Shown here piece by piece: positions 1 through 61,885 of a DNA stretch of 64,000 nucleotides. Source of the DNA: Ruditapes philippinarum (taxonomy: Eukaryota); the NCBI RefSeq assembly GCF_026571515.1, contig NW_026857065.1, positions 62,001 through 126,000 of the forward strand, written 5' to 3'. Position 1 is the stretch's first letter; each line of letters begins with the position of its first letter. The translations under genes and the position numbers were made by a program. A model generated the notes under the pieces. It was given only the letters and a program-made list of their open reading frames with translations, did no database searches and was not told the DNA's origin.

Positions 1-2108
1 CCGCCATATCGAAGAGGGTCCCATGTTAGATATTCGTCTTTCCAGCTGATTTCAAAGAAGGCGGATATAAGTGCTTCCCCCGTTGTGATGTCAAAGTATT
101 CCACTCTTTTGAGATACTTAGTAATATTTACCTGGAAACAAAATTAATACTGTTGTTGAATGAGTTTAACAATAATCTGAATTTATTTAAATGATACAAT
201 TCAGTTTAGATACAGATAGCCATCCAATTGAGTGAATCTTTTTTTACACAGTCTGGATAATTAACCTAAAAGGCTTAATGTTACTAACGACCAAAATCTG
301 AAAATAATTGTATAATTACACATTGGTGTTTCAGGTATAGTCAATGAACAAATGAGGTTGAAATATTGAAAATATGTTCAACAAGTGGAAGCCATGACAC
401 GTATCATAATCCGACTGTTTTTTGTTATCAATTATCACCGATCATGAAATTTTTAAACTTTGCTTTGAAAGAGAAAATGAGAGCGTGTAAGATCACAGCA
501 AAATCTTTAGACAACAAATAGATGAAGGCGTATGGGAAGACGCAGTCAAGACATTATCGGTAGTGAAAGGAGTATTGAAAGATGAAGTCAGTAGTTAAAT
601 GCCGTTAGTCATTTTCAGTTTCATTTACTTCATATAACATCTTATAAATAGAAATTCTTATTTCAACAGGTGTTTTTTTGTATATGCGCCTGGTATAACA
701 CTGATATTTCTTAGGAAATAGTGGTTATTTTGACAGTTGGCATATGCAGTAACTATTGAAACTGTCCGTTTACAAATTTTGTTACAAGTCAACATATATA
801 TTTTTTTTGAATTTACCATAAAATGTTTCTTGATATATCAAACATGTAGAATATTCAATGAAAAAAAAAAGATATTTGAGATATCTATATATATTTACAG
901 AATTCATGTTTATTTTTTTTTTTTTTTTTCAGTTAAGAATCTTAAAAAAATCATATTTTAAAGAATAATATTCAGATTATTATTTGTTTCATACAGATTC
1001 ATAAGATAAAGTTATCTCTGTGTAAAATTGTAATTGCCATATGTATTAAGCTGTCATATACATGTTTTATATTTGGCTATTTTGACAGTTTTGATAAACA
1101 AGTATACGGTTACCATGGAAATAGCCTGGGATTCAGGCGTTGATATTTTTTTATTTATTCATAACTTACGCGCTATTTCATACTCGATCGTCATATATAA
1201 CACAACATCTCTGGTTTTGATAGTATCAACGCATGGGGAAACCTGCTGGGTTTCCCATGTCATTTTCGACTAAAGATAATCCTATTAATAGACCGATTAG
1301 CACGTGACCAACAAATAACATGATTAAATCGAAATCGAGGCGAAGATGATAAATGTTGAAAATTTGACGCCATTTACCATTAAAAATTGAGTCCAGCACA
1401 ATTATCTGATGCTCACACACTTTATCTTCTTTAACTAATCACACCTGTTGATCAAATTCACTTATCATGAAATAAACTTTGTCAACGAGTGTTAGTTTTT
1501 AATCGGAAATGGTGTTTTGAAAGCGAGGCTCCGTAACTGTTCGTTGAGCTTCGGATCACTTCGTGGAAATTCCGTTTCTTTTTTTAGAAACTAGTTTGTT
1601 GTTGCATGAATTATCGTTCTTTAATAACACCCGTAATTTTCGGGGTGTATACTAGGTGGCGCTTCGATGGAAAATTGTATTTCCCCAGGCTGTCGATTTG
1701 CCGAACAGAAGCGCATAATAAATCGACAGACTGGAACCCAGGCTACCATGGAAACTGCCATTTTACAAAAATACAACACGTCGACATATGTTTGTCTTTC
1801 TATTTTGGAATTAACAATTGAATTTTACTTATCATATAAAAAATTTAGAAGATTCAATGAAAGGATAATTCTTTCCTAAAACTGTAGAAAATGTTTTAAT
1901 CAATGTAAAATAATGGTATTAAATTATAAAAAAGTAAATAATATCATACCTGTATTTTATTTGATTGGTTTTGTAATGGTCTTAGGATTTTGTTGTATTT
2001 TGACTCATTGAATAGATGTCCAACTAAATCATTCATTTCCTCGTACGTTTGTCCAAGCATAATCGCTAAATTACAAGTAATTAACATACAAACATATACC
2101 ACAAACAT
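1..2108 (-). CDS. Divergent nAChR-like Cys-loop channel subunit, subtype D copy 1 (3' part outside window); exon 1 2108..1950, exon 2 131..<1
   Basis: Manual translation: exon 1 MFVVYVCMLITCNLAIMLGQTYEEMNDLVGHLFNESKYNKILRPLQNQSNKIQ, donor CAG|gtatga; acceptor ttccag| then VNITKYLKRVEYFDITTGEALISAFFEISWKDEYLTWDPLRYGG. Near-identical to D2 (54500..51608). Integrity of the rest cannot be seen. Confidence 0.85.
1122..1745. mobile_element. Non-autonomous DNA transposon (624 bp), Academ/AcademH-like, in the D1 intron
   Basis: TIRs TAGCCTGGGATTCAG / CTGGAACCCAGGCTA; 9-bp TSD CCATGGAAA (1113-1121, 1746-1754); empty site in D2 intron (~54135 ttaccatggaagctgcc). TAG.. termini with a 9-bp TSD match what I recall for AcademH. 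Confidence 0.8.
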
Positions 2109-2881
2109 CCTGTTGTGTTATTTTATTTAAATATTTATATACAGTTTAAGTTAAAAACTTTCCGAAATTTTACACCATTCAAATTATTCCTTTCAGCGCT
2201 TTATATGATACACTTTTTTTCTCTCCCACCTGTTGAGATCAAAATGCTAAAATGTTGCTGATGGAAGTTTACAACAAAATTAAGAAAGAACTATCCTGTT
2301 GAATAGGAACATTAATTACTCAGCACAGTAATGCATGATCTGATATGGCAAGGGTTATTGATATTTGCGTGGTTGTAAAACAATAAAACCTATAATATAT
2401 TACTTCAGCAAAATGTTTATTGATTGAGTTCTTCATTTGACTGGGAAGGAATCCGACATAACTAAGAGTACAAGGTTATTACCAGAGTGGCGCAAACTAA
2501 TACTAATTCTATGAAAGTGTAAAAAAGAAACAAGACAACATAACAAAAAAAACAACAGAAAATAAACAAACAAATGAAGCGAAAGAAACAGACTTAAAAC
2601 AAAAGCTAGTCTCAAAGTTACCAAAAACTCTTATATGAATACGACATATATGTCAAGTAACATTTTTTCAGGAAGAATAAAAAAATCATTTTTTTATTTA
2701 GACATTATCATTTACTGCCACTTTTTTATAATTATTTAAACGATTTTTTCAAAGCACAGAAAACAAAAATGTTATTCATATTTCATAACTAGAATAAAAT
2801 CGGATTTGACATTTTCTCTAAAAGGTTGTCTTAAAACGTGGGTTTTGAACATTTTCAACGTATTTGGCTTGGATGAACATA

Positions 2882-7880: not shown

Positions 7881-7898
7881 ATTGGATTTGATATAAAA
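7881..7898 (+). promoter_or_regulatory. Candidate CCAAT(rev)/TATA core promoter of A-type genes
   Basis: ATTGG..TATAAAA ~100 bp upstream of the A1 ATG; similar words at the same position upstream of A2 (~40259-40278) and A3 (~59540-59558). The conservation may only reflect recent duplication. Confidence 0.25.
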
Positions 7899-7992
7899 GC
7901 GCTTATGAGTTGTGAAAATCAACTAGATTAAGGGTTGTTTTTTTTATTTCTAAGCAGTAGACTGACGATCCTAGATTTTTACTAATCACTGC

Positions 7993-10115
7993 ATGTTAAT
8001 CATGGATAAAATACCATTGTTAATGGTAATATTGAAAGCTCTTGAGTCATCGCTCGGACAAACATACACTGAAATGGACTCTTTACTAGGACATCTTTTC
8101 AATAAGACAAGATATAACAAATATCTGAGACCTGTAGAAAACCAAAGTCACGTTATTCAGGTAATTATATTGTATATTGTGTGCTACTATTTTTTCTCAT
8201 TACTTTTTTCTTTCCCTCTATGCAACATGAACTTACTTTTATTCAGTTATTAACACATAAAATCGAAACATTAAAAAATTAATAAAATATATACAATAAA
8301 CAGAATGATACTCGAAAAACAAAACAAAGTCATCTGGTTATCCGAAACTCGGCAAATGTGGTTTTTTCCAAGCTATCCCCCCCCCCCCAAAAAAAACATT
8401 TACCATGATAGCTTTACGGTACACAACCGATAACAATAGATAAGTCACCCTTCGAAGCTGTAACTGTAAAAATTTGTAATAAATTTACCCCCGGATTTGC
8501 TGGAAAAAAAACCCACAAAATATTCTTAATTCCTGAGTAAGTTTATTGTATATAGGTTTTTATTGTTCGTTACGTTTTGTCAAATTTCAAATAATTTTCC
8601 TGAGAGTAATTGCGATATATATACGAATTATCAAGTTTAAAAATGATCGATCGATTTTCATGAAACAAATGTCCAAATTCGTTACAATTTTTCTCTTGAT
8701 TTTACCCAGTCGGCCACTAATATTTCAAATACAAATACAACAGTACATTCATAATTCAATCGTTTAATTCTATAGACATACAAATACAAATATATGAGAA
8801 AAATCTATAAATCCGAGAGCAAAATTTAAATATATGTTTAAGAATGCAAATGCAGGGTTGTAAGTTAAGTTTGTATGTTTAACATTACTAATATCTTAGA
8901 TATGTGTATATTGTATGTATCGTCAGCTACTGAATTACAAATTCTCACAATTTATTTTTCCATGACCTTTTGTAGGTAAACTTTACACAGTATGTAAAAA
9001 CCATTGAACATCTTGACATCTCGTCAGGTGAGCTTCTAATAACTGGATATTTTGAAATAAAATGGACTGATGAAATGTTGACTTGGGACCCTGCTCTTTT
9101 TGGAGGTAGAGAAAAAATACAGTTGCCTAAAGACAAGTATTGGAAACCAGAGATTTCCTTAACAGACGGACCGGCAAATGAGGACACTTCGATTTATGGG
9201 AGCGGATTCTATCCCGCGTGGACCACTTACCAAGGGGTAGTAATGATCATTGCTGCAGGCAGTTACAAGACGAAATGTATTGTTGACACAACATTTTATC
9301 CTTATGATACGCACTCGTGTTATTTCCAGTTCATCGTGTCTAATCATGACTCTACGGAACTTATGATATCTTCTCCTTCACCCGATATTCATTTTAGTGA
9401 TTTCAAAGAAAATGGTGAATGGGAAGTTAAGAGTACAGATACAAATGTAATGCTGGTAAAAGAGAAAAACATAGACAATGTGGGTATACCAATGTATCAG
9501 TCATCGTTTTTGTTAAAAAGAAGGTCCAAATATGAAATGATAAATTCACTTACACCTATCACGTTTATGTTATTTCTGAATATTGCAACTTGTTTTGTTC
9601 GCCCTGAATCCGGTGAAAGGACAACATTTGCAATAACGCTATATTTAGCATTAGTTTTTGCAGCAACATCATTAACAGAGACAATACCTAGAAATTCATT
9701 AAAAGTGCCAATGATTTCGTATCAACTGCTTACGGTTAATCTCATCAACACGGTTGGCGTTTTATGGAGCATATTCATTGTTAATTGCGCGAGTAAATCT
9801 GCGGCTGATAGATATCTGCCAAATTTTCTTCTGAGGATGATTACAAAAAGGAGACAGAAAAGCAAAAATAATTGTAAAATAGTTCCTGTAGAAAATTCAG
9901 TAGTATCGATATTGCCTGTTGAGGGTACGGATATAAGTGATGGTGACATCACTACTCAAAGTGAAGAAGTATGTAATGGACCACAATCTGCTAACATAAC
10001 TGGACACGAGGTGGCGGAAGTTCTTGATACAATTTATTTCTGGATGATCATTATTTGTATTATTTTAACAAATGTCATTTACAGTGCATTTTCGTACCAA
10101 AGTTGGTTCAGTTAG
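7993..10115 (+). CDS. Divergent nAChR-like Cys-loop cation channel subunit, subtype A copy 1, intact (435 aa); exon 1 7993..8160, exon 2 8976..10115
   Basis: Signal peptide + GQTYTEMDSLLGHLFNKTRYNKYLRP; CAG|gtaatt donor and ttttgtag|GTAAAC acceptor in frame with ORF 9075..10115; WDP, WKPEI, Cys-loop CIVDTTFYPYDTHSC, ENGEW, LKRR, M1-M3 with PESGER, M4 near the C-terminus. Confidence 0.93.
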
Positions 10116-10120
10116 ATGCA

Positions 10121-39254: not shown

Positions 39255-39520
39255 TTTTTGTTGGATCTTACATCGTATTAAAAACAATGCATGAGGCGAC
39301 TTTCCAGCTTTTCTGATGGAAGAAGACATCGAGTGCCTGTCCATGCATTATTTCAGCCAAGACCGGGAACATCAGAAGAATAAACGACGTTTCGTAAGCT
39401 AGTTGACTTACTTTCTTAATAATTACATGAAAGAATCCAAAGTCGCTGGCGGGATTCGAACCAACAGCGATAAGGGGCAAGTTATTTGAAGTCAACGACT
39501 TTAAACCACTCAGTCGCGGG
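39255..39520 (-). mobile_element. Degenerate V-type SINE
   Basis: Reverse-complement similarity to 4787-5060 (GGTTCGAATCCC B box, GGATTCTTTCATGT, CTTACGAAACGTCG); orthologous copy at ~50505-50768. Confidence 0.8.
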
Positions 39521-40369
39521 ACTGACTTTTACTTTAAAAATACATTCTCCAATATGTTGTAGACAATACTGGCATAGTAATTTAATTTTGACAAAAGATT
39601 GTAAAAATTCCAATTTGATTTTGCCCCTTTTGTAGCAAAAGCATTGTTCCAGTAGGTACACATCTCAATCTTATTTATGTTGAATAGCAACAACAACAAC
39701 ATCATCAATACATTAAAGCATTTTATTTACAATTCGAGATATCACACCCAAATATTTCAGATTTTAGATAAATATATAAATGCATAAAAGGGTTTAAAAT
39801 GCTTTTTTCCCACCGAACTTTATTAAGGCGATGTTCCTTTTATTTCCATATATTAAAATTGTTATGCCGGTGCCTTTATGTGTAAAATATTGTCTTAACA
39901 TGGGGAAGTCCAAAAAAAGACAACACATTCTTGTGTCACCCAGGGACACTTTCGTAGAGCATCTGCACGTTGGAAAGTATTGTGTTATATAGACCGTTCT
40001 ATCAGCCAATTTTAACAACACAAATAACTTTATTGATGAACTCCTATGGACTCTAAAACTGAAAAAAGTATAACACAAGGGAAATTCAATGGCTTACAAA
40101 TAAAGCTACAATTACAGTTTATATTCGCTCACGCTGATTTGAGTGGTGAAACAGGTACAATGGTTATTACTACAATCAATAATTAATTCTGGGTTGTTCG
40201 TCACCAGTATGCAATACAGATGAAATTAGTTCTAAAGTAAGATCTGCATAAACGTGTCATTGGATTTAATATATAAGCGCTTATAAGTTGTGAAAAACAA
40301 CTACATTAAGGGTATTTTTTATTTCAAAGCAATAGACTATGCAATCCTAGATATTAACTTATCACTAAC

Positions 40370-44388: not shown

Positions 44389-44915
44389 ACACTTTATGAT
44401 ACCGTATCGAAAGACCAGAACAATTTACCAGCATTTAAGTAAAGTACGGGGCAACAATTTATAATTCCTACAAGAAACTAACTTTTAAATTGCGCAATGG
44501 AATATTTAAAAGGAGGGATGCATTAATACATCATCGAGCTTTTTACAGTTTGACAAGTGCTTTTATAACAGAATTTGCTTTGCTGTCATTCAAACAATTA
44601 ATTCCATTTTGTATGACAATCAATGTCATTAACTAGTTTACTCAATATACACTTTATGTCCTTGAATCAATGTACCGTACCGAAGGACGAGAAAATTTAC
44701 CAGCACTAAAATAAAATATATTTTACAACTCCTACAAGGCACTTAGCGCCCGCTGCTTTTAAATTGCGCTATGAAATATTCAAAAAGAGGGATGTATTAA
44801 TACATCATCAAGCTTTTCACATTTTGACAAGTGTTTACATAACAGTATTTGCTTTGCTGTCATTCCAACAATTAATTCCATTTTGTATGACAATCATTGT
44901 CATTAACTATTTTAC
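44389..44915 (+). repeat. ~260-bp tandem duplication specific to the A2 unit
   Basis: ACACTTTATG...CATTAACTA block occurs twice (~44389, ~44649) but once downstream of A1 (~11430-11700). Confidence 0.75.
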
Positions 44916-47537: not shown

Positions 47538-49141
47538 ATGAACATTAATTATATCATTCGCTGGCTACACTTAATTTTTGTGAATCGGAGTGCACATGGA
47601 TAATTGTACACAGAAATGAGCGATCTTGTAGACCACTTATTTAATGAATCCAGATACAACAAATTTCTACGGACTTTGTACAACCAAAGTCAGCTAATTA
47701 AGGTAAATTTTGAAGTTGAGCATAATAAAACAATTATTTATCTGTAAATGAAGACCTGTTTATAAATTATATGTATTTGTGAGTAAACACACATATACTG
47801 GGTTTGTGAAATCAACTTGACGATGAGCAGTTAAAATAATATACACTATTTAAAGAAGTGAAGTAAGAAAAACTTCAATTATAGTTTTTTATTTTAATTA
47901 GTTTTTGTAAATAGAAAGACAAAAAGAATCCGACTTGTATAGTAGAGGGTAAAGTAATACAAAATGTTATATTTATTGAAGATCAATCTTACCCAATTTC
48001 TGTTAGAAATTGAAACGTTTGACATAATTTCGGGAGGGCTGGATATATATGAATTCTTCAAAATTACATGGACAGGTGAACTTCTTACATGGGACCCTTT
48101 TGTACACCATGGCAAGGAATGAATTCCATTGCCAAAGGGAAAATTGTGGAAACCAGGAATTTTGTTAAGAAGTGGTGCAGCCGCCGACAGTTCTGCAATC
48201 ACATAATGCAAATTTTCACCGGCATGGGTAAGTCACCAAGGCTCTGTTTTAATGACACCAGTTTTTACCTTCAGGGTTAGATGCAATATTGATACAACGT
48301 TTTATCCTTTTGACAGACATGAGTGTAGTATTTACTTCATTGTATCTAATCATGATTCCACTGAATTAGTTCTTAATTCTCCGACAAATTTCTAGATACT
48401 AGAAATCTAGAAGAAAATGGCCAATGGGATGTAGAAAATTTTGCCGAGAGTATTGATGAAGGAAAAGATGAAAAGATTGAGCAGATGGCAATCCCAATGT
48501 TACGTGCCTTTTTCACTTTGAAAAGAAGACTTCTGTCTGCACTTATTAACAGTATAGCACCGTCTCTACTACTTTGTATCCTTAATATTCTGACATGTTG
48601 GGTACACCCTGATTCTGGAGAAAGATTGTCACTTGTAGTGACTTTATATCTGGCTTTTGTTTTCACAACTACGTCATTCATGGATAAAGTTCCTAACAAT
48701 TCATTATAGATGCCTGTGCTTTCGTTTTTCATTCTTACTATCAATGTTATTAATGCAGTCTGTGTTACATGGAGCATATTTGTCGTACATTTAGCCAAAG
48801 CAGATATTATAAGGCGAAAATTTCCAACAATTCTCACATATTTGGTGATGAAAAATAAGGGTATCTCGATGTCTAAGATAAGAAACAAGGTTAAACCTGT
48901 TATTGAAATGGAACAAACAAATCAAGTACAATCCGATACGGGCAACGATTTGAACGAAATAAAAGAGGACCGTGTTGTAAATTATGATCGAAGACGAAAT
49001 AAGTGGACTCGAATTATCATCCGTTCTTGGCAGAAAATTCTTTTGGATTTTAATATTTATCCTATTATTTCTTTGCATCTTTTATTTCATATTTTTACTG
49101 AGCAAGAGCATGTAAATACTGTTAGAAGAAAAATAATCTAG
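47538..49141 (+). pseudogene. nAChR-like subtype E copy 2, heavily disabled pseudogene; exon 1 47538..47702, exon 2 47982..49141
   Basis: CAA to TAA in exon 1, TGA at ~48120, TAA at 48204-48206 shared with E1, frameshift near 48385, TAG at 48707-48709, further frameshift near 48990; intron shortened to 279 bp (647 bp in E1). Confidence 0.92.
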
Positions 49142-49239
49142 ATTAATCGACTAAAAATGTAAGACAGTTAAAATAGAATGAACACTCCCATTGTTATAAA
49201 AAAAGTACATTATTACTACGTATTCATCAATAACAACAT

Positions 49240-49452
49240 GGCCGAGTGGTTAACACGTCGGACTAGTGATCTAAAGATTGCTGACCAAGTGGGTTCAAAC
49301 CCTGTCAGGGGCAAGTCGTTGTTTCCTTGAGCAAGAAACTTTACATTCATTGCTTAGTAATGGTTGGTTACAGGAACGGATTCGAGAGTGCTTCAATAAG
49401 CTCATGGTAAAGCTTCCAACACGGTCGAACTAAAAATAAATTTGTATAAACT
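49240..49452 (+). mobile_element. tRNA-derived CORE-type SINE
   Basis: GGCCGAGTGG A box, GGTTCAAACCC B box, core GTTTCCTTGAGCAAGAAACTTTAC..CATTGCTTAGTA; 11-bp TSD AATAACAACAT (49229-49239, 49453-49463); empty site downstream of E1 (~38167). Confidence 0.88.
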
Positions 49453-50504
49453 AATAACAACATTAAAAACACATAATAAAATTTGAAATCTGGTACATAC
49501 ACAGACAGAATGAAATTTATCAAATCAGCATAATTATCGCTTTGAATGTAATATGAAAATTGTAATGCATCGGAATTAATATGACCAAACAGAAATACAA
49601 TATAAAACAAACATGTATTTTCATGATCAAATAACTTTACAATTAGTTTATTTGTCTTCATTTCCAATTTCTAAGCTTTTTTAATGCGCAATGCTTGAAC
49701 TATGCACATAACTTCTGTAAGAGTGTTGGAAAGGAATTACCCATAATAAGCAACGGACACAAACATAAAAGGATGAACTGAAATTAAAGAATCGGTATGA
49801 TAGAGTTTTTTCAATCGTCCCAAGCACTATAGCACTCAACCACAACTCAATCATAAATATTAAAACGTCAGGGCAAGAAGTCTTTTTATCTGTCTGCACA
49901 GTTCAATAGTTTTTGTTATTGGAATTATAGTCCAGGGGTCGCTTATTCGATCCTTGGGCAAAGCAAATTTTTCCGTGACAATTGATCCCGGTTTTTGTGT
50001 CTCATCAATTGTCATTTCTCTCTCACTACCATTTCAATAACTCAACATCTCAATGAATTAGTATTCGGTCATTAGAATAAGGAATAATTGGTAATGAAAA
50101 TGTGTCAACATCGGTGTAAATGAGTCAGATAAATTAATAAACAATAAATTCATTATATTTTTTCTACTAAATCAGTCAGAACTCTATCAACAGGTTTAAA
50201 GCAAAAATTTAAAAGATTATACAAGAGATATATGTTTCTAATGATTTTATTAAGATTTTAAATTCATAAAGAACATTTTCCATTGTAGACCAATCCATTT
50301 TAAAACTGTGTAATAAAAAGGCAAATTGAAAACCTAAAGACAAATTGTATAATTGTTCTTTCAATACACATAGATGCCACGAAACTAAATGTATGAATAA
50401 AAATAAGGTTTATTCCATTTATCAAACAGAATGATATTAATAAAAGTTTGAATTGTGTACATTTTTGCTTACATACATGATCAATTACATGTACTTATTT
50501 TTTT

Positions 50505-50768
50505 ATTTCTTTTTTGTCGGATCTAACGGCTTATTAAAACAATACAGATGTCATTTGGCGACTTTCCAAGTATTCTGACCTCGAGTGCCGCCTGTCCATG
50601 CATTATTAAAGCCAAGACCGGGAACATCAAGAAAATGAACGACGTTCCTTAAGGTAGTTTGATTCCTTTCTCACATGACAAAATCCAAAGTCACTTGCGG
50701 GATTCGAACCAACAGCGATAAGGGGCAAGTTATTTGAAGTTAACAACTTAAACCACTCGGTTTCAGGA
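50505..50768 (-). mobile_element. Degenerate V-type SINE (duplicate of 39255-39520)
   Basis: Same position and orientation in the duplicated E unit; B box GGTTCGAATCCC on the minus strand. Confidence 0.75.
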
Positions 50769-51607
50769 CTTTTTACTTTAAAAAATACATTCTCCAATAT
50801 GTTGTAGACAATACTGGCATAACAATTAAATTTTAAAGAAGGTTTGTAAAAAATCCAATATTTTTACTGCCGCTTTTATAAAAGCATTGTTTCAGTAGGT
50901 TCACATCTCAATTTTATAAATGTAAAATAGCAACAACAGCATCAATACATAAAGCATCCTATTTACAATAAACAAGGGTTATTCGAGATATCACACGCAC
51001 ATATTTCAAATTAATGGAATTGCTCATTGATAGAGCTTCCATGAATGCATAACAAAATGAGTGCTTAATCTTTTTACATATATGTCAGATAATAACTCTT
51101 TGTACTTTGAATTTATATGAAATGTCATTCGAATAAACTCAAATCCAAATATTTCTGCTAAAAAAGTTGTGTATGGAAAAAAAACATGCTACACATGTAT
51201 GGAGATAAGAAAACATGTACAAGTGTATTAAAGCTGTGGTTGAACATGACGTAATAGACAAATAATATGTAATCATCGTCTGAGTTGGTTAAAAATAAAG
51301 AAATAAGTTTTCGTCCAATTTGAATTTTTTTCTCTTTTTTCTATTGAAATGCAAAGCTGAAAGTTCTCTTTAAAGTTTAATCAAACCAATAATACATTGG
51401 CGCAAACAAAATTTAATAAGAAAATATTACATCTCTCATGAATTTTACTGCAGATTTTAAAGTAATTTTTTTATTTAATTTAATTTTTAGCGATGTTGTT
51501 TTTATTTCTAATTTGTAGTTATCCTTCTGATGTTATGTTTTTAATGTTGCTTGACTTGCCCCCTTGTCCTGATATAAACACAATCTCGAAGACTCGTAGA
51601 GGTGTAC

Positions 51608-54500
51608 CTATGATTGAGCCCAGATGCCGATTATAACGGAAGCAATAGTAACATTGAGAGATGTTATTGAAAACGCAAGTAACCAAAAGAATAAATTATC
51701 AGCAACATTAGCAACTTCACGTCCGGTGATATCATGTTGAAACTTATTTTCAAGTCCGCTGATATCATGTTGAAACTTTTTTTTAGAAATGTTTGGATTT
51801 TTTTTCAATACCATCCTTGACACTTTGTACCTCTCCGTTTTCATTAGATTCCATTGTCTGCGCCGTTTCATTTCCAGACTCAATTTTATTAAACATACAT
51901 GTTTTATTTTGCCTCCTTTTCACAATCATGTTTAAAATTAGACTTGGGACTTTTCTTTGATCAATTGCTTGTATACTTGCCAAGTTAACAATAAATATAC
52001 TCCACGCCACCCCGATTGTATTGATTAGATTTATAATAAGTACTTCATATGACATACATGGCATACGCAATGAATTATTTGGTATCTTCTCAATTGCTGC
52101 AGTTGCAGAAAATACTAATGATAAATATAATGTTATTGCAAATGACAGTCTTTCCCCCGAATCTGGTCTAACGTAACATGTCGCCATATTAAGAAATGTC
52201 ATAAGCGTTAAAGGCATATATATGTTAATGGTTATGAACGCGGGTCTTCTTTTCAAAGTCAATGATATACGAAGCATTGGAACAGAAACCTTTCAAATTC
52301 TTTTTTCTTGAATTAGAGAATTCGCTGTATTTAAACTTTTAATCACCCATTCGTCATTGTCCTCAAGTTCATCAATGTTACTTGATGGCGAATTAATTAT
52401 CAATTCATTTGCGCCATAATTAGACACTATGATATTAATATTACAATGATGAATATCAAATGGATAAAGCGTTGTATCAACGTCGCATCTTGTGTCGTAC
52501 GTACCTCCCAAAACCATTATAACATCTCCATTGTACTCAACCCAAGCAGGAAATACGCCATTACTGTTAAATGAAAACGCATCGTTGCGGCGTCCATTCA
52601 TCAATTCAAATTCCGGTTTCCAGAATTTACCTTTGGGTAATTGAATACTCTCTTTTCCGCCATATCGAGAGGGGTCCCATGTTAGATATTCATCTTTCCA
52701 GCTGATTTCAAAGAAGGCGGATATAAGCGCCTCCCCTGTTGTGATGTCAAAATATTCAACACTTTTTAAATACTTGGTACAATTAACCTGGAAATAGAAT
52801 TGAAACTGTTGTTGAATGATTTCATCAAAATCTAAATTTCTTTCATTAATACCATTACCATTAAAGGGATACTCAGGCAAAATAATGGCAAAAATATAAA
52901 AATGATTTTCTGTACTCAAATCACCCTAAAATGACATTTATTAAAGTCCCAAAATGAATTTCTGTATAAATTCTATATATTTTGGGTTTGAAGTTTAAAT
53001 ATATCTATATATGTTGAACGAAATGAATAAGTAATTTTGAAATATTGAATATATGTCCAACAAGGGGTAGCCATGTCAACGTTTCATACCACGGCAGTTT
53101 CTAGTTATCAATAATCACAGTTAAGACAGCATTTAGGCACCGAACATGAAAGGTTTAAACTTTACTTTGAAAGAGAAAATGTGAACGGCTGAGATCACAG
53201 CAAAAACTATAGACAACAAATAGACGAAGGCGTATGGGAGGACGCGGTCAAGACATGATCGGTAGATAAATGAGTATGGAAGGATGAAGTCAGTAGTAAA
53301 ATGCCGTTTGTCATTTTCAGTTTGATTTACTTCATTTAACATCTAAAGAAATAGGAGTTCATATTTCAAAAGGTGATTTTTTTGTATATGCATCTGGTAT
53401 AACACTGATATTTCTTAGGAAATTGTGGTTATTTTGACAGTTGGCATAACCATTGAAACTGTCCGTTTACAAATATTGTTAAAAGTCAACATATATTTTT
53501 CTTTAAATTTACCATAAATGTTACTTGATATATCAAAAATGTAGAATATTCAATGAAAAAAATGTTTCGATATTTTTTAATTATTTACAGAATTCATGTT
53601 TTTTGTTCTCATTTTTCGTTCCGTTAAAAAGCGTGAAAAACACATTTTCAAAAGAAATATAAAAAGATTATCGTTTGTTCATACAGAATTATTGTGTTTT
53701 ATTTGTATAAAATTGTGCTTGTTGTGCTATCTAACAGCGTGGCTACTTTTGTGATATTTACTGTTACACTGGAAACTGCCATTTTAGAAAAAAAATCCAA
53801 CTCGTCAACATATAGTTTTATTTTTATTTTTGAATTCATCATTAATTTAATTATAAAATGTTTTTTAAAATTGTATGAAAGTATTTTTTCGATATTTATA
53901 AATATTTTCAGAATTCATGTTTATTTTTGTCACTTTTGTTCAGTTAAGAATCTTGAAAAAACTCATATTTGAAAGAAATATATTCAGATTATTATTTGTT
54001 GCATACAGAATCATAAGATAAAGTTATCTTTGTGTAAAATTGTGCTTGCCGTATGTATTAAGCTGTCATATACATGTTTTATTTTCTAAATTACAGTTTC
54101 GCTATTTTGAGAGTTTTGATATACAAGTATACGGTTACCATGGAAGCTGCCATTTTACAAAAATTCAACATGTCGACATATGTTCGTCTTTTATTTTGGA
54201 ATTCACAATTGAATTTTACTAATCATATAAAAAATTTAGAAAATTCTATGAAAGGATTATTCTTTCCTAAAACTGTAGAAAATGTTTTAATCAATGTAAA
54301 ATAATGCTAATAAATAATTAAAAAGTACAATAATATCATACCTGTATTTTATTTGACTGGTTTTGTAATGGTCGCAAGATTTTGTTGTATTTTGTTTCAT
54401 TGAATAGATGTCCAACTAAATCATTCATTTCCTCGTACGTTTGTCCAAGCATAATCGCTAAATTACAAGTAATTAACATACAAACATATACCATTAACAT
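51608..54500 (-). pseudogene. nAChR-like subtype D copy 2; exon 1 54500..54342, exon 2 52787..51608; in-frame TGA at 52295-52293 and a frameshift at ~51805-51777
   Basis: Exon 1 MLMVYVCMLITCNLAIMLGQTYEEMNDLVGHLFNETKYNKILRPLQNQSNKIQ; Cys-loop CDVDTTLYPFDIHHC; ORFs 52293..52919 and 51783..52277 are in the same frame (..QEKRI*KVSVPMLR..); M4 lies in ORF 51608..51883 after A-homopolymer runs. Confidence 0.82.
53425..54290 (+). repeat. Imperfect ~330-bp tandem repeat (3 units) in the D intron
   Basis: Units with g(c/t)ta(t/c)tttt..gaa(a/g)ctg(t/c)c(g/a)ttt motifs at ~53425, ~53738, ~54100; the D1 intron holds two such units (~721, ~1075). Confidence 0.6.
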
Positions 54501-54981
54501 CCTGTTGTGATGTTTTATTTAAATATTTATATACAGTTTAAGTTAAAAACTTGCCGAAATTTTACACCATTACAATTATTTCTTTTCAGCGCTTTATATG
54601 ATACACTTTTTTCTCTCCCACCTGTTGAGATCAAAATGCTTAAATGTTGCTGATGGAAGTTTACAACAAAATAAAGAAAGAACTGTTCTGTTGAATAGGA
54701 ACATTAATTACTCAGCATAGTAATGCATGATCTGATATGGCAAGGGTTATTGATATTTGCGTGGTTGTAAAACAATAAGACCTATAATATACTACTTCAG
54801 CAAAATGTTTATTGATTGAGTTCTTTATTGACCAGGAAGGAATCAGTAACAACTTAGAAGGCAGGTTTATTACCAGAGTAATGGCACAAACCAGTACTAA
54901 TTCTGTAAACATACAAAAACATTGCGATATATATGCGAAACAGCAATTTTCAGGAAGAGTAAAATACTGAATTTCTGTTTA

Positions 54982-55247
54982 CGAGGTATAGTCTAAAATT
55001 TCTGGCGCCAGTATTTTGAGACTTTCATGAAAGAGTATTATTCACTTTAAGAAAAGTCAAATTATTTCTGAAATGCTCCGTACACGGGTTGCCGGCGTGT
55101 TTCATGTGATAAATAATATCCAAATATTTTCTAAATTGATTTTTTTCATACATGTTGCTACTCAAATTACTTAAAAATACCTTCATGGAAAATTTCATGA
55201 CAATCTTTTTAAACAGACCAGTCCGGGAACTTTTTGACTATACCTCG
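54982..55247. mobile_element. mariner-type MITE (266 bp)
   Basis: TA|CGAGGTATAGTC ... GACTATACCTCG|TA; empty site in the paralogous region at ~2699. Confidence 0.88.
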
Positions 55248-57145
55248 TAGTAATCATTTTTTATTGCCATTTTCACAAAAATTATTTTACGACTTTTCGA
55301 AGCACAGAAACAAAAATGTTATCTACAATTCGTAACTAGAAAAATATCAGATTCGACATTTTCTCTAAAAGAAAGTCTTCAAACGGAAATATATTGTTCC
55401 ATAAGTGGTTTTTGAACATTTTTACTTTTTTTGGCATGATGATCATGAAATATAAAAAAATCCCCTTTTTTACAGAGTATAATAAACCAAACTCTAAACT
55501 GCAAACACTAACAGCATATTAGGCAAAATTATATCAATAGAACTTTTTCTATTTTTCTATCTGTTTCCTATTTTAAGTCGAAAATAGTAAACATTTCATT
55601 GCACAAATTTATTATTTAATAGCAGTTTCCGTTGCACATAGATTCCCTCGGCAACTTTTTTAGCGATACGCATTTAATCTGCAACTGTTACATGCAAACA
55701 ATGTTGACATTAAACATGTCTTTAATATAACTTTAGGTCATCCACGTCAAGTTATTCCCTTAGTGCTTAAACTTAACTTTTATTTTAGTGTATGTGTATA
55801 TGACATACAATTTATAAACATTGTACAAAGACTTTTCCTTTAAACAATAGTGTCAAAAATAAGTTTCATTAAGAATTTTTATTGCATTGAAAATTCTACA
55901 TTACTTAAGCAATGCAGCAGGTTATCATAGAATGAATGACAGCCACCCATGATTACTGATGTCTGTGGTGGCAAATGCTGAAACTGACCTTTTCATAGTC
56001 AAAAATAAAATTGAACACAATGATGGCAATTTGCCAACTCAATTATATTTTATACGTTTTCACTGGCAATTAAACACTTTACACTTAATTTTTATAGTAA
56101 CTGGTTGCCATACAGGCAAGCAAGTATTGGCAGGACCTGGTTTTCGAGGCTCACTCATTTTTTATATATACCCATATTAAACACAATCTATACATAATGA
56201 TTTAATCGTTTGCATGATTAAGTTTTTTAAGCGCCCGTATTCACTGTCCCTGACCTAACGCCTATGCGGTGTAACTTTCAAAGAGAGTATAATAAGCGTA
56301 TTTAATAGGACATGTTGTCACCTGAATGTTATCAACATACAATTTTGGCACATTTTTATCGGCTGATTATTTTATGCTTTTCAAGATTTTTTGTTCATTG
56401 TAATTTTGCGTTCACACGCAAATCATAATACAACGTTTGCCAACGTAACATTAATATTGCGATAACCACATCTACATTTGTTCATAATTATAACCTTGTG
56501 TGTTGCAAAGTCGAAAATTGTGTAGTTATGACATGTTAATTTCATCTGGCAATAGATTCAACTAACATTAAGTTAATGGCAAATCAAAACTTTGTAAAAC
56601 AACACTAAGAACTTTAATGATGTTCTCTCTTTCTGTGTCCTATTCTTGCCTCATCTTTCCAAGTGCGTGCCCCATCTTTACGCTGTATTTGTTCGGCATA
56701 TTCTGTATACTATTATCCTTTTCGGCCTATAATAATCTAGGTTGAGTTTATCTAAAAAATTTGGGAACTGTGCTGTTTTCAGTGATTGTTTTTATTCTTC
56801 CTCCATCTTCAGTTTATGTTCAGCATGTAAATCCACCAAGGTGACAAATTATAGTTTATGGTACTGTTTATTAAGTACGAATAAAATATAATGGAAAATA
56901 TTGTCAAACCGCTGAGTAAATTCCGGGGGTGTGATATATCATGATTGAAATGTTAAAGTCTTTAACTGCAAAGCTACTAATACTGAATAAATGAATAAAC
57001 AACGAAAGCACACTATTCAACACATTATTCTATTTGGATAAGATTTATAAAACAGGTTAACACTATTTAAAATGACGGAGAAAGATTTTCTTTTCGAACA
57101 GTCCAAAATGATATTTAAAACAGAGTTCGTATTTGTATTATATTG

Positions 57146-57905
57146 TATTAGCGAGCTCGACGAGCTGGCCCAGAGGGCCTGCTCGCAAAGCGAGCGTTGC
57201 GGTAACGCTAGTACCTGTTAAGTGATGGTTTTGAAGTACCGAATTGGACACATCGCAACCTTTCGAATTTAAAGATAACGGTAAACACTGAAGAATTCTG
57301 ACTGAAAATGGGTGTGTAGACTGGTCACCCGCGCACGTCTATGAGAACCATAATTGGACAGTGAATCAGAATAACGGAAGCTGTGTATAAAATATCGAAT
57401 GATAAAATGAAAATTGAAAGCGCCATTTTGTTTGAAAAATCTGATAAAGAAAAACAATTTTTTTGTCGAATTTTGTTGTGAAAACTATCTAGAATGAAAG
57501 AAAATGGTCTAACTAAGAATATCCTTTATTCAGTCGTTAACGCTGTACAGACATTTAAAGTTTTGTTTATGTGACGTCACAATGTAGCGTCAAACAGCAC
57601 GTGCAAAACAAACAAATCAAGTACGCTATTTTAATGTCGCAAACGTTTTAAGTTTTACATTTATTTCACTTTTAATAATCTTTATTTCGCTTGAATAATT
57701 ATAGAGTGAAATAAAATAAACGAAGTTTTATCAACGTTTTCAAAACTCGTTAATCATTTAACGACATGGGCGGAGCAATATTAAACACAGTACGTGAAAC
57801 GTCACACGCACTCGTCACTGCATTTGAAATAAAAGTGAGCGATTATTTCATACTATTTCACGTTAAAAGTACATCGAGCTCGCTTTGAGGCTTTGCCTTT
57901 TCATA
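57146..57905 (+). mobile_element. Helentron-associated (HINE-like) non-autonomous element
   Basis: Subterminal IRs AGCGAGCTCGA (~57150) / TCGAGCTCGCT (~57875), 5' hairpins, 3' stem-loop AGGCTTTGCCT; absent from paralogous region ~5705-5725. Confidence 0.7.
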
Positions 57906-59650
57906 TAATATATATTTAAAAGCTTTCAAATTGTTTAAGGTTCATCAATATAAAAAAAACATATATTTCAACTAATTCTCCTTCTAATGTGCTTCGTCCT
58001 TCGAGAGACTTTATATCAATAATAAAATCAAGTCGCTCTAAAACCGATGCTAAGTGATTATGGCTGTAGTACATTTAGTAATACATTAAGCACTATTGTT
58101 CATTAACAGATCTAATGAAACTATATCAGAAATGTTTACTTATTACTTAATTTTCACTGTAACTGATGAATCTCCGTATCTCAGAATTGATGTTATAAAA
58201 TGTTCTTTATTTGTATTTGATTTATCATATTGTTAGGTATTCAAGATTAAACATTCGATAATTATGGCTTTGCTTCTTGCTAATTCAATCAAACCTCTTA
58301 AATCAGAATTTAATGGTTCTGGTATTTCCTTTGTGAATATACAAAAAGCAATTCTCAAGAGTACTTTATTCTAGCAATTAACAACTGGCATGGAATGAGT
58401 TATAAATTGATATAAATATAGAACTATATAGAATAAACGCATGTGCTTGTAAAACAGATCAATGTACTTATTGACCAAGCGCAATTAAAAACTGCAACAA
58501 CCAACCTGTGTAAAATATATTTGATTTTACTTTAAACAAGATTATTGTATGTAATTAAGAAATTTAACAATTAAGAATTTATAAGCTATCAATTGAACAG
58601 AAAATAAAAACGGAATGTAATTGTTACATCAGATACTTCACAAAATTAACCACATAGAGATATTTGCCCTATACTCATCAGAAATGTAATCACGTAAACT
58701 AAAGATACTACCTACCTACCACTCTCATGTTAGTTTAATTAAAGACAAGTCAATATATTCTTGAAGCAGGTCAACACATTATTTCAGAAAATTTAAATTG
58801 TTTTTCATAAAAAAGAAGCTATTTATTTATCCATTTCATGGTGACGAATTATTTTATAGTTAAAATGTGGAAACAACTCCTCATTCAAAAACAACATATA
58901 CGATATATGGTTGGTTTTTTTTTTAAATTACTTTTTACTCGTATTTGTTAGCACTGAAAGAAAAAGCATGTCCGTACCAAACGACATATTAGATTACAGA
59001 CAATATTTACTTACATTTGATTGTACTTAAAGAAATTTCTTTGAGAAAAGAAGCCGGGGATCTCTTTTTAGATAAATATAAAAATGGGTTTAAAAAAACT
59101 AATTTTCCCACAGAACTTTATTTAGACGATGAACAATTTTATTCCTTTTATTTATATTTTAAAATTGTTATGCCGGTGCCTTTATGTGTAAAACATTGTC
59201 TTAACATGTTAAAAAAAGAGACAACACAGTCTTGTGTCACTCAGGAATAATTTCGTAGAACATATGCACTTCGGAAATTATCGCGTTATATAGACAGTTC
59301 TATCAGCCAATTTTAACAACATAAATGACTTTCTTTACTTCTATGGAATATAAAACAAGGCAATATCAGTAGCTTGCAAATAAAGCTACAACTACCATTT
59401 TATATTGACTCATAATTATTTGAGTGGTGAAACAGGTACAACGGATATTACTACAATCAATAGTTAACTCTGGGTTGTTCGTCACCAGTATGTAATACAG
59501 ATGAAATTAGTTCTAGAGAATGGTCTGCATAAACATGTCATTGGATGTAATTTATAAGCGGTTATGAGTTGTGAAAATCAACTTAATTAAGGGTTGTTTT
59601 TTATTTCTAAGCAGTAGACGGAGCAATCCTAGAGTTTGACTTATCACTGC

Positions 59651-61885
59651 ATGTTAACTATGGATAAAATAACATTGTTAATGGTAATATTAAAAGCTCT
59701 TGAGACATCGCTTGGACAAACATACACTGAAATGGACTCTTTACTAGGACATCTTTTCAATGAGACAAGATATAACAAATATCTGAGACCTTTAGAAAAC
59801 CAAAGTCACGTAATTCAGGTAATTATATTGTATATTGTGTGCTACTATTTTTTTCTCATTACTTTTTTATTTCCCTCTATGCAACATGAACTTATTTTTA
59901 ATAATGTCTTCGAAAGTGCGACGCTAGTAATTTGTCTAGGTCTTAATCGTCATAGTCTTTGACCTGTTCTTAATTATTTATAAAAATTCAGTTGACGGCT
60001 TTGTCTATACTTGTAACAAATCTATAAAAAAGCTTAATTTAAGGTGTACAAATTATTTCCATTAAGTTGTAAACACATAAAATCGAAACATTAAAACATC
60101 ATTATAAAATATATACAATTATCAGAATGATACTCGAAAAACAAAACAAAGTCATCTGGTTATCTGAAACTCTGCAAATATGGGTTTTTCCAGGCTATTC
60201 CCCCGAAAAAATCATTTACCATGATAGCTTTACGGTACACTACCGATCACAATAGATAAGCTGTAACTGTAAAAAAATTTGTAATAATTTTACCCCCGGC
60301 TTTGCTGGAAAAAATATATTCTTAAGTCCTGAGTAAGTTTATTGTATATAGGTATTTTATTGTTTGTTACATTTTTCCAATTTTAAATAATTTTCCGTCC
60401 GAGTGTAATTGCGATATATATGCAAAAACAAATGTCCAAATTCGTTAATTCGTTACAATTTTTCTCTTGATTTTACCCAGTCGGCCACTAATAGTTCAAG
60501 TACAAATACAACAGTACATTCATAATTCCAATCGTTTAATTCTATAGACATACAAATACAAATATATGAGAAAAATCTATAAATCCGAGAGCAAAATTTA
60601 AATATATGTTTAAGAATGCAAATGCAGGGTTGTAAGTTAAGTTTGTATGTTTAACATTACTAATATCTTAGATATGTGTATATTGTATGTATCGTCAGCT
60701 ACTGAATTACAAATTCTCACAATTTTTTTTCCATGACCTTTTGTAGGTAAACTTTACACAGTATGTAAAAAGCATTGAAAATCTTGACATCTCGTCAGGT
60801 GAGCTTCTAATAACTGGATATTTCGAAATAAAATGGACTGATGAAATGTTGACTTGGGACCCTGCTCTTTTTGGAGGTAGAGAAAAAATACAGTTGCCCA
60901 AAGATAAGTATTGGAAACCAGAGATTTCCTTAACAGACGGACCGGCAAATGAGGACACTTCAATTTATGGGAGCGGATTCTATCCCGCATGGGCCACTTA
61001 CCAAGGGATAGTAATGATCATTGCAGCAGGCAGTTACAAGACGAAATGTATTGTTGACACAACATTTTATCCTTATGATATGCACTCGTGTTATTTTCAG
61101 TTCATCGTGTCAAATCATGACTCTACAGAACTTGTGATATCTTCTCCTTCACCCGATATTCATTTTAGTGATTTCAAAGAAAATGGTGAATGGGAAGTTA
61201 AGAGTACAGATACAAATGTAATGCTGGTAAAAGAGAAAAACATAGACAATGTGGCTATACCAATGTATCAGTCATCGTTTTTGTTACAAAGAAGGTCTAC
61301 ATTTGAATTGATAAATTCACTTACACCTATCATATTTATGTTATTTCTAAATATTGCAACTTGTTTTGTTCGCCCTGAATCCGGTGAAAGGACAACGTTT
61401 GCAATAACGCTATATTTAGCATTAGTTTTTGCAGCAACATCATTAACAGAGACAATACCTAGAAATTCATTAAAAATGCCGATGATTTCGTATCAACTGC
61501 TTACGGTTAATATCATCAACACGGTTGGCGTTTTATGGAGCATATTCATTGTTAATTGTGCGAGTAAATCTGCGGCTGCTAGATATCTGCCAACTTTCTA
61601 CTAAGAATGATTATGAAACGGAGAAAGAAAAGTAAAAATAATTCTACAATGATTCCTGTAGAAGAATCAGCTGTTTCGATATTGCCTGTTGAGGGTACGG
61701 ATATTAGTGATGGTGACACCACTCCTCAAAAGGAAGGAGTATGTAATGAACTACAATCTGCTAACATAACTGGGCAAGATGTGGCTGAAGTTCTTGATAC
61801 AATTTACCTTTGGATGATCATTATTTGTATTATTTTAGCAAATGTCATATACAGTGCATTTTTGTACAAAAGTTGGTTCAGTTAG
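59651..61885 (+). pseudogene. nAChR-like subtype A copy 3; exon 1 59651..59818, exon 2 60747..61885; 1-bp deletion at ~61592 after M3 (pseudogene or assembly error)
   Basis: Highly similar to A1; CCAAACTTT (A2) vs CCAACTTT here gives a stop at 61604; the remainder including M4 is ORF 61607..61885. Confidence 0.8.

What the first reader, a model, noticed from the sequence alone, without database searches (positions are those of the whole stretch)
1..61885. Tandem array of nine intron-poor Cys-loop receptors with no acetylcholine-binding site: candidate bivalve chemosensory receptor family
Seen: five subtypes keep the channel scaffold but lack every principal-face ACh determinant when aligned by eye to alpha7. 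Loop A Tyr becomes T/T/T/M/R (WKPEISLT); loop B Trp becomes Ser in all (FIVSNHD vs FGSWSY); loop C has no Tyr-x-Cys-Cys and its second Tyr becomes I/F/M/V; loop D Trp becomes Y/C/F. Established: bivalves have large expansions of intron-poor nAChR-like genes, mostly of unknown ligand, and cephalopod chemotactile receptors are tandem, intron-poor nAChR derivatives that lost the ACh site and sense environmental compounds. Inference: clustering, rapid turnover and a remodelled pocket fit an independent sensory (or immune/environment-sensing) receptor repertoire.
Basis: partly seen in the sequence, partly recalled or inferred. Interest (0 to 1): 0.85.

Follow-up and report, generated by a model that had tools for sequence, protein, structure and literature searches.

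The report
Clam orphan nicotinic-like receptor gene cluster
This stretch of Manila clam DNA holds nine copies, only three of them intact, of a nicotinic-receptor-like ion-channel gene that has lost its acetylcholine-binding residues; it is one more example of a gene expansion already described in bivalves, and its proposed sensory role is untested.

Summary
The window (Ruditapes philippinarum, contig C5552:62001-126000) carries nine two-exon Cys-loop receptor genes of five subtypes. All lack the loop A Tyr, the loop B Trp, the loop C Tyr-x-Cys-Cys and second Tyr, and the loop D Trp. They keep the Cys-loop, four TM helices and a cation-type pore.

Three corrections:
- Only c0, c1 and c3 are intact. 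c2 lost exon 1 in a ~505-bp deletion. c4, c5, c6, c7 and c8 carry nonsense or frameshift mutations.
- The array is not a simple tandem. It is about two of at least three segmental copies of a ~40-48 kb five-gene cassette, D(+) E(-) A(+) B(-) C(+), with 16 copies on the contig and a related block on C402.
- The family is one clade among at least 121 such loci in this genome. This is the bivalve nAChR expansion of Jiao et al. 2019. The first readers flagged at least seven similar arrays elsewhere in this genome.

dN/dS is 0.13-0.54 in the pocket loops of all but the c3-h3 pair (0.79), so selection looks purifying, not CR-like diversifying. A new motif is conserved: loop B Ser-Asn-His and a loop E Trp.

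No expression data could be obtained, so the chemosensory reading stays a hypothesis, and one already raised in print. It is a new member of a known kind, of modest interest.

The parts
1..2108 (-). c0, subtype E. Exon 1 at 2108..1950, intron, exon 2 starts at 131 and runs off the window start. Intact in the full contig (= P0013, 436 aa).
7993..10115 (+). c1, subtype A, intact. Exon 1 at 7993-8160 (56 aa), exon 2 at 8976-10115 (379 aa), GT..AG.
   Evidence: AF2 model
20235..21347 (-). c2, subtype B. Exon 2 ORF is intact (370 aa). Exon 1 was removed by a ~505-bp deletion at 21523/21524, so the copy has no signal peptide and is probably a pseudogene.
26559..27924 (+). c3, subtype C, intact (= P0004, 397 aa, NCBI 'beta-3-like'). 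Exon 1 at 26559-26717, exon 2 at 26890-27924. The intracellular loop is about 40 residues shorter than in paralogue h3, and the conserved GEW is GEL.
36101..38079 (+). c4, subtype D, pseudogene. Exon 1 at 36101-36265, exon 2 at 36913-38079. In-frame TAA at 37135. First Cys-loop Cys is replaced by Tyr.
40370..42599 (+). c5, subtype A. Exon 1 at 40370-40537, exon 2 from 41461. A 1-bp deletion at ~42470 gives a stop at 42481, and TM4 is out of frame.
47538..49141 (+). c6, subtype D, pseudogene. Stop in exon 1 (47601). TGA at 48120. TAA at 48204, at the same codon as the c4 stop. Several frameshifts.
51608..54500 (-). c7, subtype E, pseudogene. Exon 1 at 54500..54342, exon 2 from 52787. TGA at 52295. 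A +1 insertion in an A-run. A 33-bp in-frame duplication (51716-51783).
59651..61885 (+). c8, subtype A. Exon 1 at 59651-59818, exon 2 from 60747. A 1-bp deletion at ~61592 gives a stop at 61602. It is annotated truncated as P0008 (341 aa).
28961..64000 (.). Third copy of the ~40-48 kb five-gene cassette. It holds an extra inserted A-type segment carrying c5. Its intergenic DNA is collinear with units 1 and 2 of the contig at 75-97% identity.

Best explanation
The window is about two of at least three segmental copies of a ~40-48 kb cassette of five old paralogues, D(+) E(-) A(+) B(-) C(+). The genes are two-exon, nicotinic-receptor-derived orphan Cys-loop subunits in the Manila clam. They form one clade of the large bivalve expansion of nAChR-like genes, which is already described.

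Shown:
- The proteins have the pLGIC fold, an intact Cys-loop and a cation-type TM2 (-1' Glu, 9' Leu, 20' Glu/Asp).
- They lack the ACh aromatic box on both the principal and the complementary face.
- In its place they have a family-conserved pocket motif: loop B Ser-Asn-His, loop E Trp and a hydrophobic residue before a conserved Pro-Met in loop C.
- The cluster evolves by birth and death: 3 of 9 copies are intact in the window and 6-7 of 16 on the contig.
- The intact copies have been under purifying selection.

Inferred:
- The intact subunits assemble into pentameric cation channels.
- These channels are not gated by ACh at a classical orthosteric site. They respond to another, still unknown ligand or condition.
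- Whether that ligand is environmental (sensory), endogenous or stress- or immune-related cannot be decided from sequence.
For: - Nine loci with the Pfam LBD and TM domains.
- Exact two-exon models with GT..AG.
- Species and annotated proteins, with P0004, P0008 and P0013 mapping at 97.8-100%.
- Residue mapping against alpha4/alpha6 and against the alpha7-like P0170 and P0085.
- The TM2 motif.
- AF2 pLDDT 85.7; top Foldseek hits are nAChR subunits from human alpha3beta4 and alpha4beta2 and from muscle-type receptors, TM-score about 0.7-0.8.
- 16 copies in a repeated D-E-A-B-C order, with collinear intergenic DNA at 75-97%.
- Disruptions mapped base by base.
- dN/dS is 0.16-0.49 overall (0.68 for c3-h3) and 0.13-0.42 in the ECD outside c3-h3. 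It is 0.13-0.54 in the pocket loops, with 0.79 for c3-h3.
- At least 121 related loci in the genome.
- The family is a 21-row clade with 99% support, inside a 49-row clade that lacks the loop B Trp.
- Literature: PMC6896357, PMC13174522, PMC11592408.
Against: - There is no expression, electrophysiology or ligand data for any copy. The tools for reads and transcript contigs were unavailable.
- Two thirds of the window's copies are broken. c3 shows relaxed constraint (dN/dS 0.68 against its paralogue h3, a shortened intracellular loop, GEW changed to GEL), so even some intact copies may be decaying.
- Cation selectivity and pentamer formation are inferred from motifs only.
- Single-base frameshifts in c5, c7 and c8 were not verified against reads. 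The one in c7 lies in a homopolymer and could be an assembly error.
Confidence: 0.6

Rival explanations
1. The family is an independently evolved ionotropic chemoreceptor repertoire, analogous to the cephalopod chemotactile receptors. It would be expressed in siphon, mantle edge, palps, gill or foot epithelia and gated by environmental compounds.
For: - ACh site lost, tandem intron-poor genes, high turnover and a lineage-restricted clade.
- The pocket loops A, C and F are the least conserved parts of the ECD: identity 0.33-0.37 against 0.52 for the rest.
- CRs set the precedent (PMC11526382), and the MolluscaGenes preprint raises the same possibility (PMC13174522).
Against: - No expression data.
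- Pocket-loop dN/dS is 0.13-0.54 in twelve of thirteen pairs (0.79 for c3-h3), with no pair above 1.
- The loop B Ser-Asn-His and loop E Trp are conserved across subtypes and in Mercenaria. That fits one shared ligand type better than a broad odorant repertoire.
- Only five subtypes exist, and most copies are dead.
- The family is not closer to CRT1 than to human alpha subunits.
Confidence: 0.2
2. The genes encode accessory (structural or modulatory) subunits. Like vertebrate beta3/alpha5, they occupy non-binding positions in heteropentamers built around canonical ACh-binding alpha subunits.
For: - Both binding faces are degenerate for ACh, while the channel, Cys-loop and gating elements are conserved.
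- NCBI names several of them 'beta-3-like'.
- Purifying selection is strongest in TM1-3.
Against: - The pocket loops are still constrained, and a new motif is conserved in them. A face that binds nothing would not need this.
- 'beta-3-like' is an automatic best-hit name.
- No co-expression or co-assembly data.
Confidence: 0.2
3. The genes encode stress- or immune-responsive epithelial or haemocyte channels. This is what has been proposed for expanded oyster nAChR genes, which are highest in gill and are regulated by temperature, salinity, air exposure and infection.
For: Jiao et al. 2019 report these expression patterns for expanded bivalve nAChR genes (PMC6896357).
Against: This is evidence by analogy from other species and other clades. 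Nothing was tested for this family.
Confidence: 0.15
4. The cluster is essentially non-functional. It would be a recently amplified block of decaying retro-like gene copies whose intact ORFs merely reflect their youth.
For: - 6 of 9 window copies and all four D copies on the contig are broken.
- The c3-h3 dN/dS is 0.68.
- Jiao et al. note that more intron-poor than intron-rich nAChRs have no or low expression.
Against: - Between-subtype dN/dS is 0.14-0.20 in the ECD with dS above 1. That implies long purifying selection before the recent block duplications.
- Related intact genes exist in Mercenaria and Mya.
- Within-subtype pairs A, B and E have dN/dS of 0.26-0.49.
Confidence: 0.12

Closest known systems
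Expanded intron-poor nAChR-like genes of bivalves (Jiao et al. 2019, BMC Genomics, PMC6896357)
   Same: Bivalve host. Intron-poor genes in tandem arrays of up to 12. High sequence diversity. The principal ACh-binding residues are often not conserved. Many low-expression or pseudogene copies. At least 121 loci in this genome.
   Different: That study did not include Ruditapes or describe this clade. New here are the multi-gene cassette organisation (five subtypes duplicated as a block), the conserved loop B Ser-Asn-His and loop E Trp motif, and the copy-by-copy pseudogene map.
Cephalopod chemotactile receptors (CRT1, PDB 8EIS/9E6B; van Giesen 2020, Allard 2023, Kang 2023, as reviewed in PMC11526382)
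   Same: Derived from nAChRs. Lack ACh-binding residues. Cation-channel scaffold. Intron-poor and clustered. Lineage-specific expansion.
   Different: CRT1 is a weaker match than the human alpha subunits: 80-83 against 107-115 bits. One intron is retained. No region-level sign of diversifying selection in the pocket. No sensory-tissue expression or ligand is known.
Canonical neuronal nAChR alpha/beta subunits (human alpha4, alpha6, alpha3, beta2; best PDB sequence and fold matches)
   Same: Fold, Cys-loop, TM topology, and -1' Glu / 9' Leu / 20' Glu pore rings. E-values of 1e-27 to 1e-32 and TM-score about 0.7-0.8.
   Different: All five aromatic-box positions are replaced. There is no vicinal Cys pair. 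The intracellular loop is very short. The genes have two exons.
Orphan lophotrochozoan Cys-loop receptors such as the Alvinella Alpo receptor (PMC10338036). PDB 8BX5 is a hit but was not confirmed to be this receptor.
   Same: Lophotrochozoan nAChR-like receptors with no known neurotransmitter agonist.
   Different: A different phylum and clade. The match is only 83 bits. It was not examined further.

Membership tests
Cys-loop / pentameric ligand-gated ion channel superfamily | Neur_chan_LBD beta-sandwich plus a four-helix Neur_chan_memb domain | tested here: met
   Pfam E-values of 1e-18 to 6e-25 (LBD) and 1e-6 to 1e-10 (TM). The AF2 model has 9 strands and TM1-4, pLDDT 85.7. Foldseek TM-score is about 0.7-0.8 to nAChR chains.
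Cys-loop / pentameric ligand-gated ion channel superfamily | Cys-loop disulphide pair, C-x13-C | tested here: met
   Both Cys are invariant in alignment A1 (C101, C115) and in all subtypes. The exception is pseudogene c4, where the first Cys is Tyr.
Acetylcholine-gated nicotinic receptor (agonist-binding subunit) | Aromatic box: loop A Tyr, loop B Trp, loop C two Tyr, loop D Trp | tested here: not met
   The positions read T/R/M, Ser, non-aromatic/I-F-M-V, and Y/C/F, against alpha4, alpha6 and the alpha7-like P0170 and P0085.
Acetylcholine-gated nicotinic receptor (agonist-binding subunit) | Vicinal Cys-Cys at the tip of loop C (alpha subunits) | tested here: not met
   Loop C has no Cys in any copy.
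Cation-selective pLGIC | TM2 -1' Glu without the anion-type Pro-Ala-Arg; 9' Leu; outer-ring acidic residue | tested here: met
   S-G-E-R ... L(9') ... E/D(20') in all subtypes. This is a sequence inference only; selectivity was not measured.
Bivalve intron-poor nAChR-like expansion (Jiao et al. 2019) | Bivalve genome, at most a few introns, tandem arrays, many paralogues | tested here: met
   Ruditapes philippinarum. One intron. 16 copies on the contig. At least 121 loci in the genome.
Cephalopod chemotactile receptors (CR) | Common descent with the CR clade | tested here: inconclusive
   CRT1 scores lower than the human alpha subunits, which argues against close kinship. No phylogeny with CR sequences could be built, because no CR sequence was available by reference.
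Cephalopod chemotactile receptors (CR) | Diversifying selection concentrated in the ligand pocket | tested here: not met
   Region-level NG86 dN/dS in the six pocket loops is 0.13-0.54 in twelve of thirteen pairs and 0.79 for c3-h3, never above 1. Site models were not run.
Cephalopod chemotactile receptors (CR) | Expression in peripheral sensory cells, and gating by poorly soluble environmental molecules | not testable with these tools

The most novel reading that the evidence does not exclude
Venerid clams have an independently evolved family of ACh-insensitive ionotropic receptors. The old binding site has been rebuilt around a conserved loop B Ser-Asn-His and a loop E Trp. The family is organised as a five-subtype cassette whose members co-assemble, and it is used to sense an external or non-cholinergic cue in siphon, gill or mantle epithelia. 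That would be a second, convergent case of the nAChR-to-sensory-receptor transition known from cephalopods.
Probability: 0.15. Interest if true: 0.7.

Novelty: new member of a known kind. Interest (0 to 1): 0.3.

Why it matters
If one of the intact subunits (c1, c3, c0, or the copies outside the window) proved to be gated by a non-cholinergic cue, it would give the large bivalve nAChR expansion its first ligand. It would also test whether the shift from neurotransmitter receptor to sensory receptor seen in cephalopods happened again in bivalves.

As it stands, the window mainly documents how such clusters grow, by block duplication of a multi-gene cassette, and how they decay, with two thirds of the copies broken. 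It also corrects public gene models. P0002 ('pbo-5-like') is a chimera of pseudogene c4 and c5. P0008 is a truncated frameshifted copy.

Tried and rejected
The Logan, ENA and JGI homologues on 1.4-3 kb contigs begin at or inside exon 2, without exon 1, so they are no evidence of spliced transcripts.
- Exon 1 of c2. Neither tblastn at E=10 nor a pattern scan found it. DNA comparison showed it was deleted.
- Phylogeny with octopus CRs. This was not possible, because PDB sequences cannot be retrieved by reference and I did not type them. Only bit-score comparison was used.
- Site-wise positive selection. No codon-site software (PAML, HyPhy) was available, so only regional NG86 estimates were made.
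I redid it from coordinates only.
- Joined exon 1 + exon 2 models were not sent to any search tool. Searches used exon 2 by reference, or the public proteins P0004 and P0013.
- Other ORFs in the window gave no Pfam hit apart from a sub-threshold C2H2 finger. There are no tRNAs.
- The 'pbo-5-like' (proton-gated) name was rejected as evidence, because it belongs to a chimeric model.
Full report
IDENTITY OF THE WINDOW. The window is G000:C5552:62001-126000, on a 137,618-bp contig of a 1.41-Gb genome. The proteins it encodes are public Ruditapes philippinarum (Manila clam) models. P0004 ('neuronal acetylcholine receptor subunit beta-3-like', 397 aa) is gene c3. P0008 is the truncated c8. P0013 is c0. 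P0002 ('proton-gated ion channel subunit pbo-5-like', 599 aa) is an annotation chimera: it joins the ORF downstream of the stop in pseudogene c4 (37183-37962) to exon 2 of c5 (41461-42480). GC content is about 31% throughout and there are no N runs.

THE OBSERVATION. tblastn with one copy finds nine loci, and the ORFs carry Pfam Neur_chan_LBD and Neur_chan_memb. Every copy has the same two-exon structure. Exon 1 is 53-56 codons and encodes the signal peptide and the alpha1 helix. A phase-0 GT..AG intron of 172-1818 bp follows. A single exon 2 then runs from strand beta1 to the C-terminus after TM4.

Five subtypes can be told apart: A (c1, c5, c8), B (c2), C (c3), D (c4, c6) and E (c0, c7). Between subtypes the proteins are 40-60% identical; within a subtype the coding DNA is 90-95% identical.

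The first was HMMER alignments to human alpha4 and alpha6. These still carry W (loop D), W-x-Y (loop B) and Y-x-C-C-x-x-x-Y-P (loop C); P0085 also has the loop A Tyr, which amphioxus P0170 lacks. All the calls hold:
- Loop A Tyr is T/T/T/R/M.
- Loop B Trp is Ser in every copy, in the motif V-S-N-H.
- Loop C has no cysteines, and its second Tyr is I/F/M/I/V.
- Loop D Trp is Y/C/Y/F/F. There is a one-residue alignment ambiguity that would place it on a family-conserved Phe.

The scaffold is retained. The Cys-loop is C-x13-C. The TM2 pore motif is cation-type, S-G-E-R ... 9' Leu ... 20' Glu/Asp. The AlphaFold2 model of c1 exon 2 is confident (pLDDT 85.7), with a beta-sandwich, TM1-3, a disordered ~30-residue intracellular loop and TM4. 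Its best Foldseek matches are nAChR subunits from human alpha3beta4 and alpha4beta2 and from muscle-type receptors, with TM-score about 0.7-0.8.

Only c0 (which runs off the window), c1 and c3 are complete.
- c2 has an intact 370-codon exon 2, but its exon 1 is gone. Compared with its paralogues u4_B and h2_B, about 505 bp including exon 1 are cleanly deleted at window 21523/21524.
- c4 has an in-frame TAA at 37135 and has lost the first Cys-loop cysteine.
- c6 has the same TAA at the same codon (48204), further stops at 47601 and 48120, and several frameshifts. A D-type pseudogene was therefore itself duplicated.
- c5 has a 1-bp deletion at ~42470 that puts TM4 out of frame.
- c8 has a 1-bp deletion at ~61592.
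- c7 has a TGA at 52295, a +1 insertion in an A-run and a 33-bp duplication.
The single-base frameshifts were not verified against reads.

THE ARRAY IS A HIGHER-ORDER REPEAT. I fetched the rest of the contig and 70 kb of a second contig, C402. C5552 carries 16 family copies in a recurring order and orientation, D(+) E(-) A(+) B(-) C(+). Unit 1 lies upstream of the window. Unit 2 ends with c0-c3. Unit 3 holds c4, an extra inserted A copy (c5), c6, c7, c8 and a broken B copy beyond the window end.

Self-comparison shows that the intergenic DNA is also collinear between units at 75-97% identity. The cluster therefore grew by segmental duplication of a ~40-48 kb five-gene cassette, not by gene-by-gene tandem duplication. 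C402 carries A(+) B(-) C(+) in the same arrangement, plus three more distant copies. It may be a paralogous block or a divergent haplotype (dS 0.04-0.08). All four D copies on C5552 are dead, but an intact D-type protein (P0015) is annotated elsewhere in the species.

EVOLUTIONARY CONTEXT. Exon 2 of c3 matches at least 121 places in this genome at E<=1e-10. Most are single open frames of 380-490 codons, often several per contig. An exhaustive HMMER search shows identity falling quickly, from 57% to 45% to 37% and then below 35%. Named close relatives come from Ruditapes and Mercenaria (both Veneridae), and a more distant one from Mya.

In a FastTree phylogeny rooted on amphioxus alpha7-like sequences, the family is a 21-row clade (99% support). 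It sits inside a 49-row clade (99%) in which the loop B Trp is already lost and a loop E Trp is common. Most other neighbouring clades keep the loop B Trp but lack the loop A Tyr and the Cys-Cys pair. The tree uses FastTree local support only, and many long branches meet, so only these two well-supported nodes are used.

SELECTION. Pairwise NG86 estimates on intact copies give dN/dS of 0.26-0.49 within subtypes A, B and E, 0.68 for c3 against h3, and 0.16-0.28 between subtypes. The extracellular domain (0.13-0.42, excluding c3-h3) is not evolving much faster than TM1-3 (0.0-0.31, excluding c3-h3).

The six binding-site loops taken together are less conserved than the rest of the ECD. Mean pairwise identity is 0.417 against 0.523, and only 1.2% of random column sets are as low. 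Loops A, C and F are the most variable, and loops B and D the most conserved. Even so, loop dN/dS stays at 0.13-0.54, with 0.79 for c3-h3.

The pocket is therefore remodelled and then held. The Ser-Asn-His of loop B and the Trp of loop E are nearly invariant from subtype A to Mercenaria; the loop E Trp aligns with the alpha4 loop E residue I take, from memory of the alpha7 numbering, to be Leu109. This differs from octopus CRs, where positively selected sites concentrate in the pocket (PMC11526382). Site-model tests could not be run.

MECHANISM. Shown: the fold, the Cys-loop, the cation-type pore motifs, the absence of the ACh box on both faces, a conserved replacement motif, purifying selection, and birth-and-death turnover. 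Inferred: the intact subunits form pentameric cation channels that ACh cannot gate at a classical site, and that respond to some other ligand or condition.

Sequence cannot tell what that is. A sensory receptor, an accessory subunit of canonical nAChRs and a stress- or immune-regulated epithelial channel all remain open. [quoted passage not shown] In Manila clam, 'acetylcholine receptor' genes as a class are reported as high in foot and siphon, without gene-level detail (PMC11592408).

COMPARISON WITH WHAT IS KNOWN. The general phenomenon is published. Jiao et al. 2019 report 99-217 nAChR genes in bivalves, mostly intronless or intron-poor, 55-65% of them in tandem arrays of up to 12. Only 13 of 33 oyster alpha-type genes keep the principal binding residues, and more intron-poor than intron-rich genes show no or low expression. 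The clam genome paper lists Neur_chan_LBD among the families expanded in Ruditapes, and neuronal acetylcholine receptors among the expansions it shares with Mercenaria. The MolluscaGenes preprint describes novel clades with substituted binding residues and a 'CR-like' clade that reaches bivalves. It suggests explicitly that divergent nAChR clades may contribute to chemosensation.

The family is not close kin of the CRs on the available measure. CRT1 scores 80-83 bits against 107-115 for human alpha4/alpha6. The first readers have flagged at least seven similar arrays elsewhere in this genome, and the same window has a separate note on the loop E Trp and the Cys-free loop C.

VERDICT. Three things are new at this locus: the cassette architecture, the conserved replacement motif, and the copy-by-copy pseudogene map with corrections to two public gene models. 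It is a new member of a known kind; interest 0.3.

PROCEDURE NOTES. Spliced (joined) models were not sent to search tools. Searches used exon 2 by reference, or the public proteins. No step needed referral.

Noticed in passing
window 37183-37962 + 41461-42480: The public protein P0002 (599 aa, 'proton-gated ion channel subunit pbo-5-like') is a chimeric gene model. It joins the tail of pseudogene c4 to exon 2 of c5. The 'pbo-5-like' name therefore carries no functional information.
   Followed up: yes
contig C5552:1-62000 and 126001-137618 (loci L013-L021); C402:1-70000 (L022-L028): The array extends beyond both window ends. There are seven more copies on the same contig, and a related A(+) B(-) C(+) block plus three more distant copies on contig C402. 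C402 may be a divergent haplotype or a paralogous block (dS 0.04-0.08 to the C5552 copies).
   Followed up: partly
window 37135 and 48204: c4 and c6 have the same Glu-to-TAA nonsense codon at the same position. The upstream D copies u1 and u6 have Glu there. A gene that was already dead was therefore copied by the block duplication. c6 has since collected many more lesions than c4.
   Followed up: yes
window 1950-7993 and 21347-26559: The E/A and B/C genes are arranged head to head across ~5-6 kb of intergenic DNA in every cassette copy. This could mean shared bidirectional regulation or co-expression of subunit pairs. Not tested.
   Followed up: no
all copies, Cys-loop and loop B (e.g. c1 exon 2, window 8976-10115): Two histidines are conserved across the family. 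One replaces the canonical Gln in the Cys-loop (Y-P-[YF]-D-x-H-x-C). The other is at loop B +2 (S-N-H). The Cys-loop His is also the majority residue in the wider 51-sequence alignment A1. A role in proton or metal sensitivity is only a guess.
   Followed up: no
window 22587-22635; 25732-25938: A perfect (TAT)16 microsatellite, and a 101-bp unit repeated twice (88% match), lie in the B/C intergenic region. The first is about 1 kb from the deletion that removed exon 1 of c2.
   Followed up: no
window 25331-25675 (-): A 115-codon ORF with a sub-threshold C2H2 zinc-finger match (E 0.006, 17.7 bits against a cut-off of 27). It is probably chance or a relic.
   Followed up: partly
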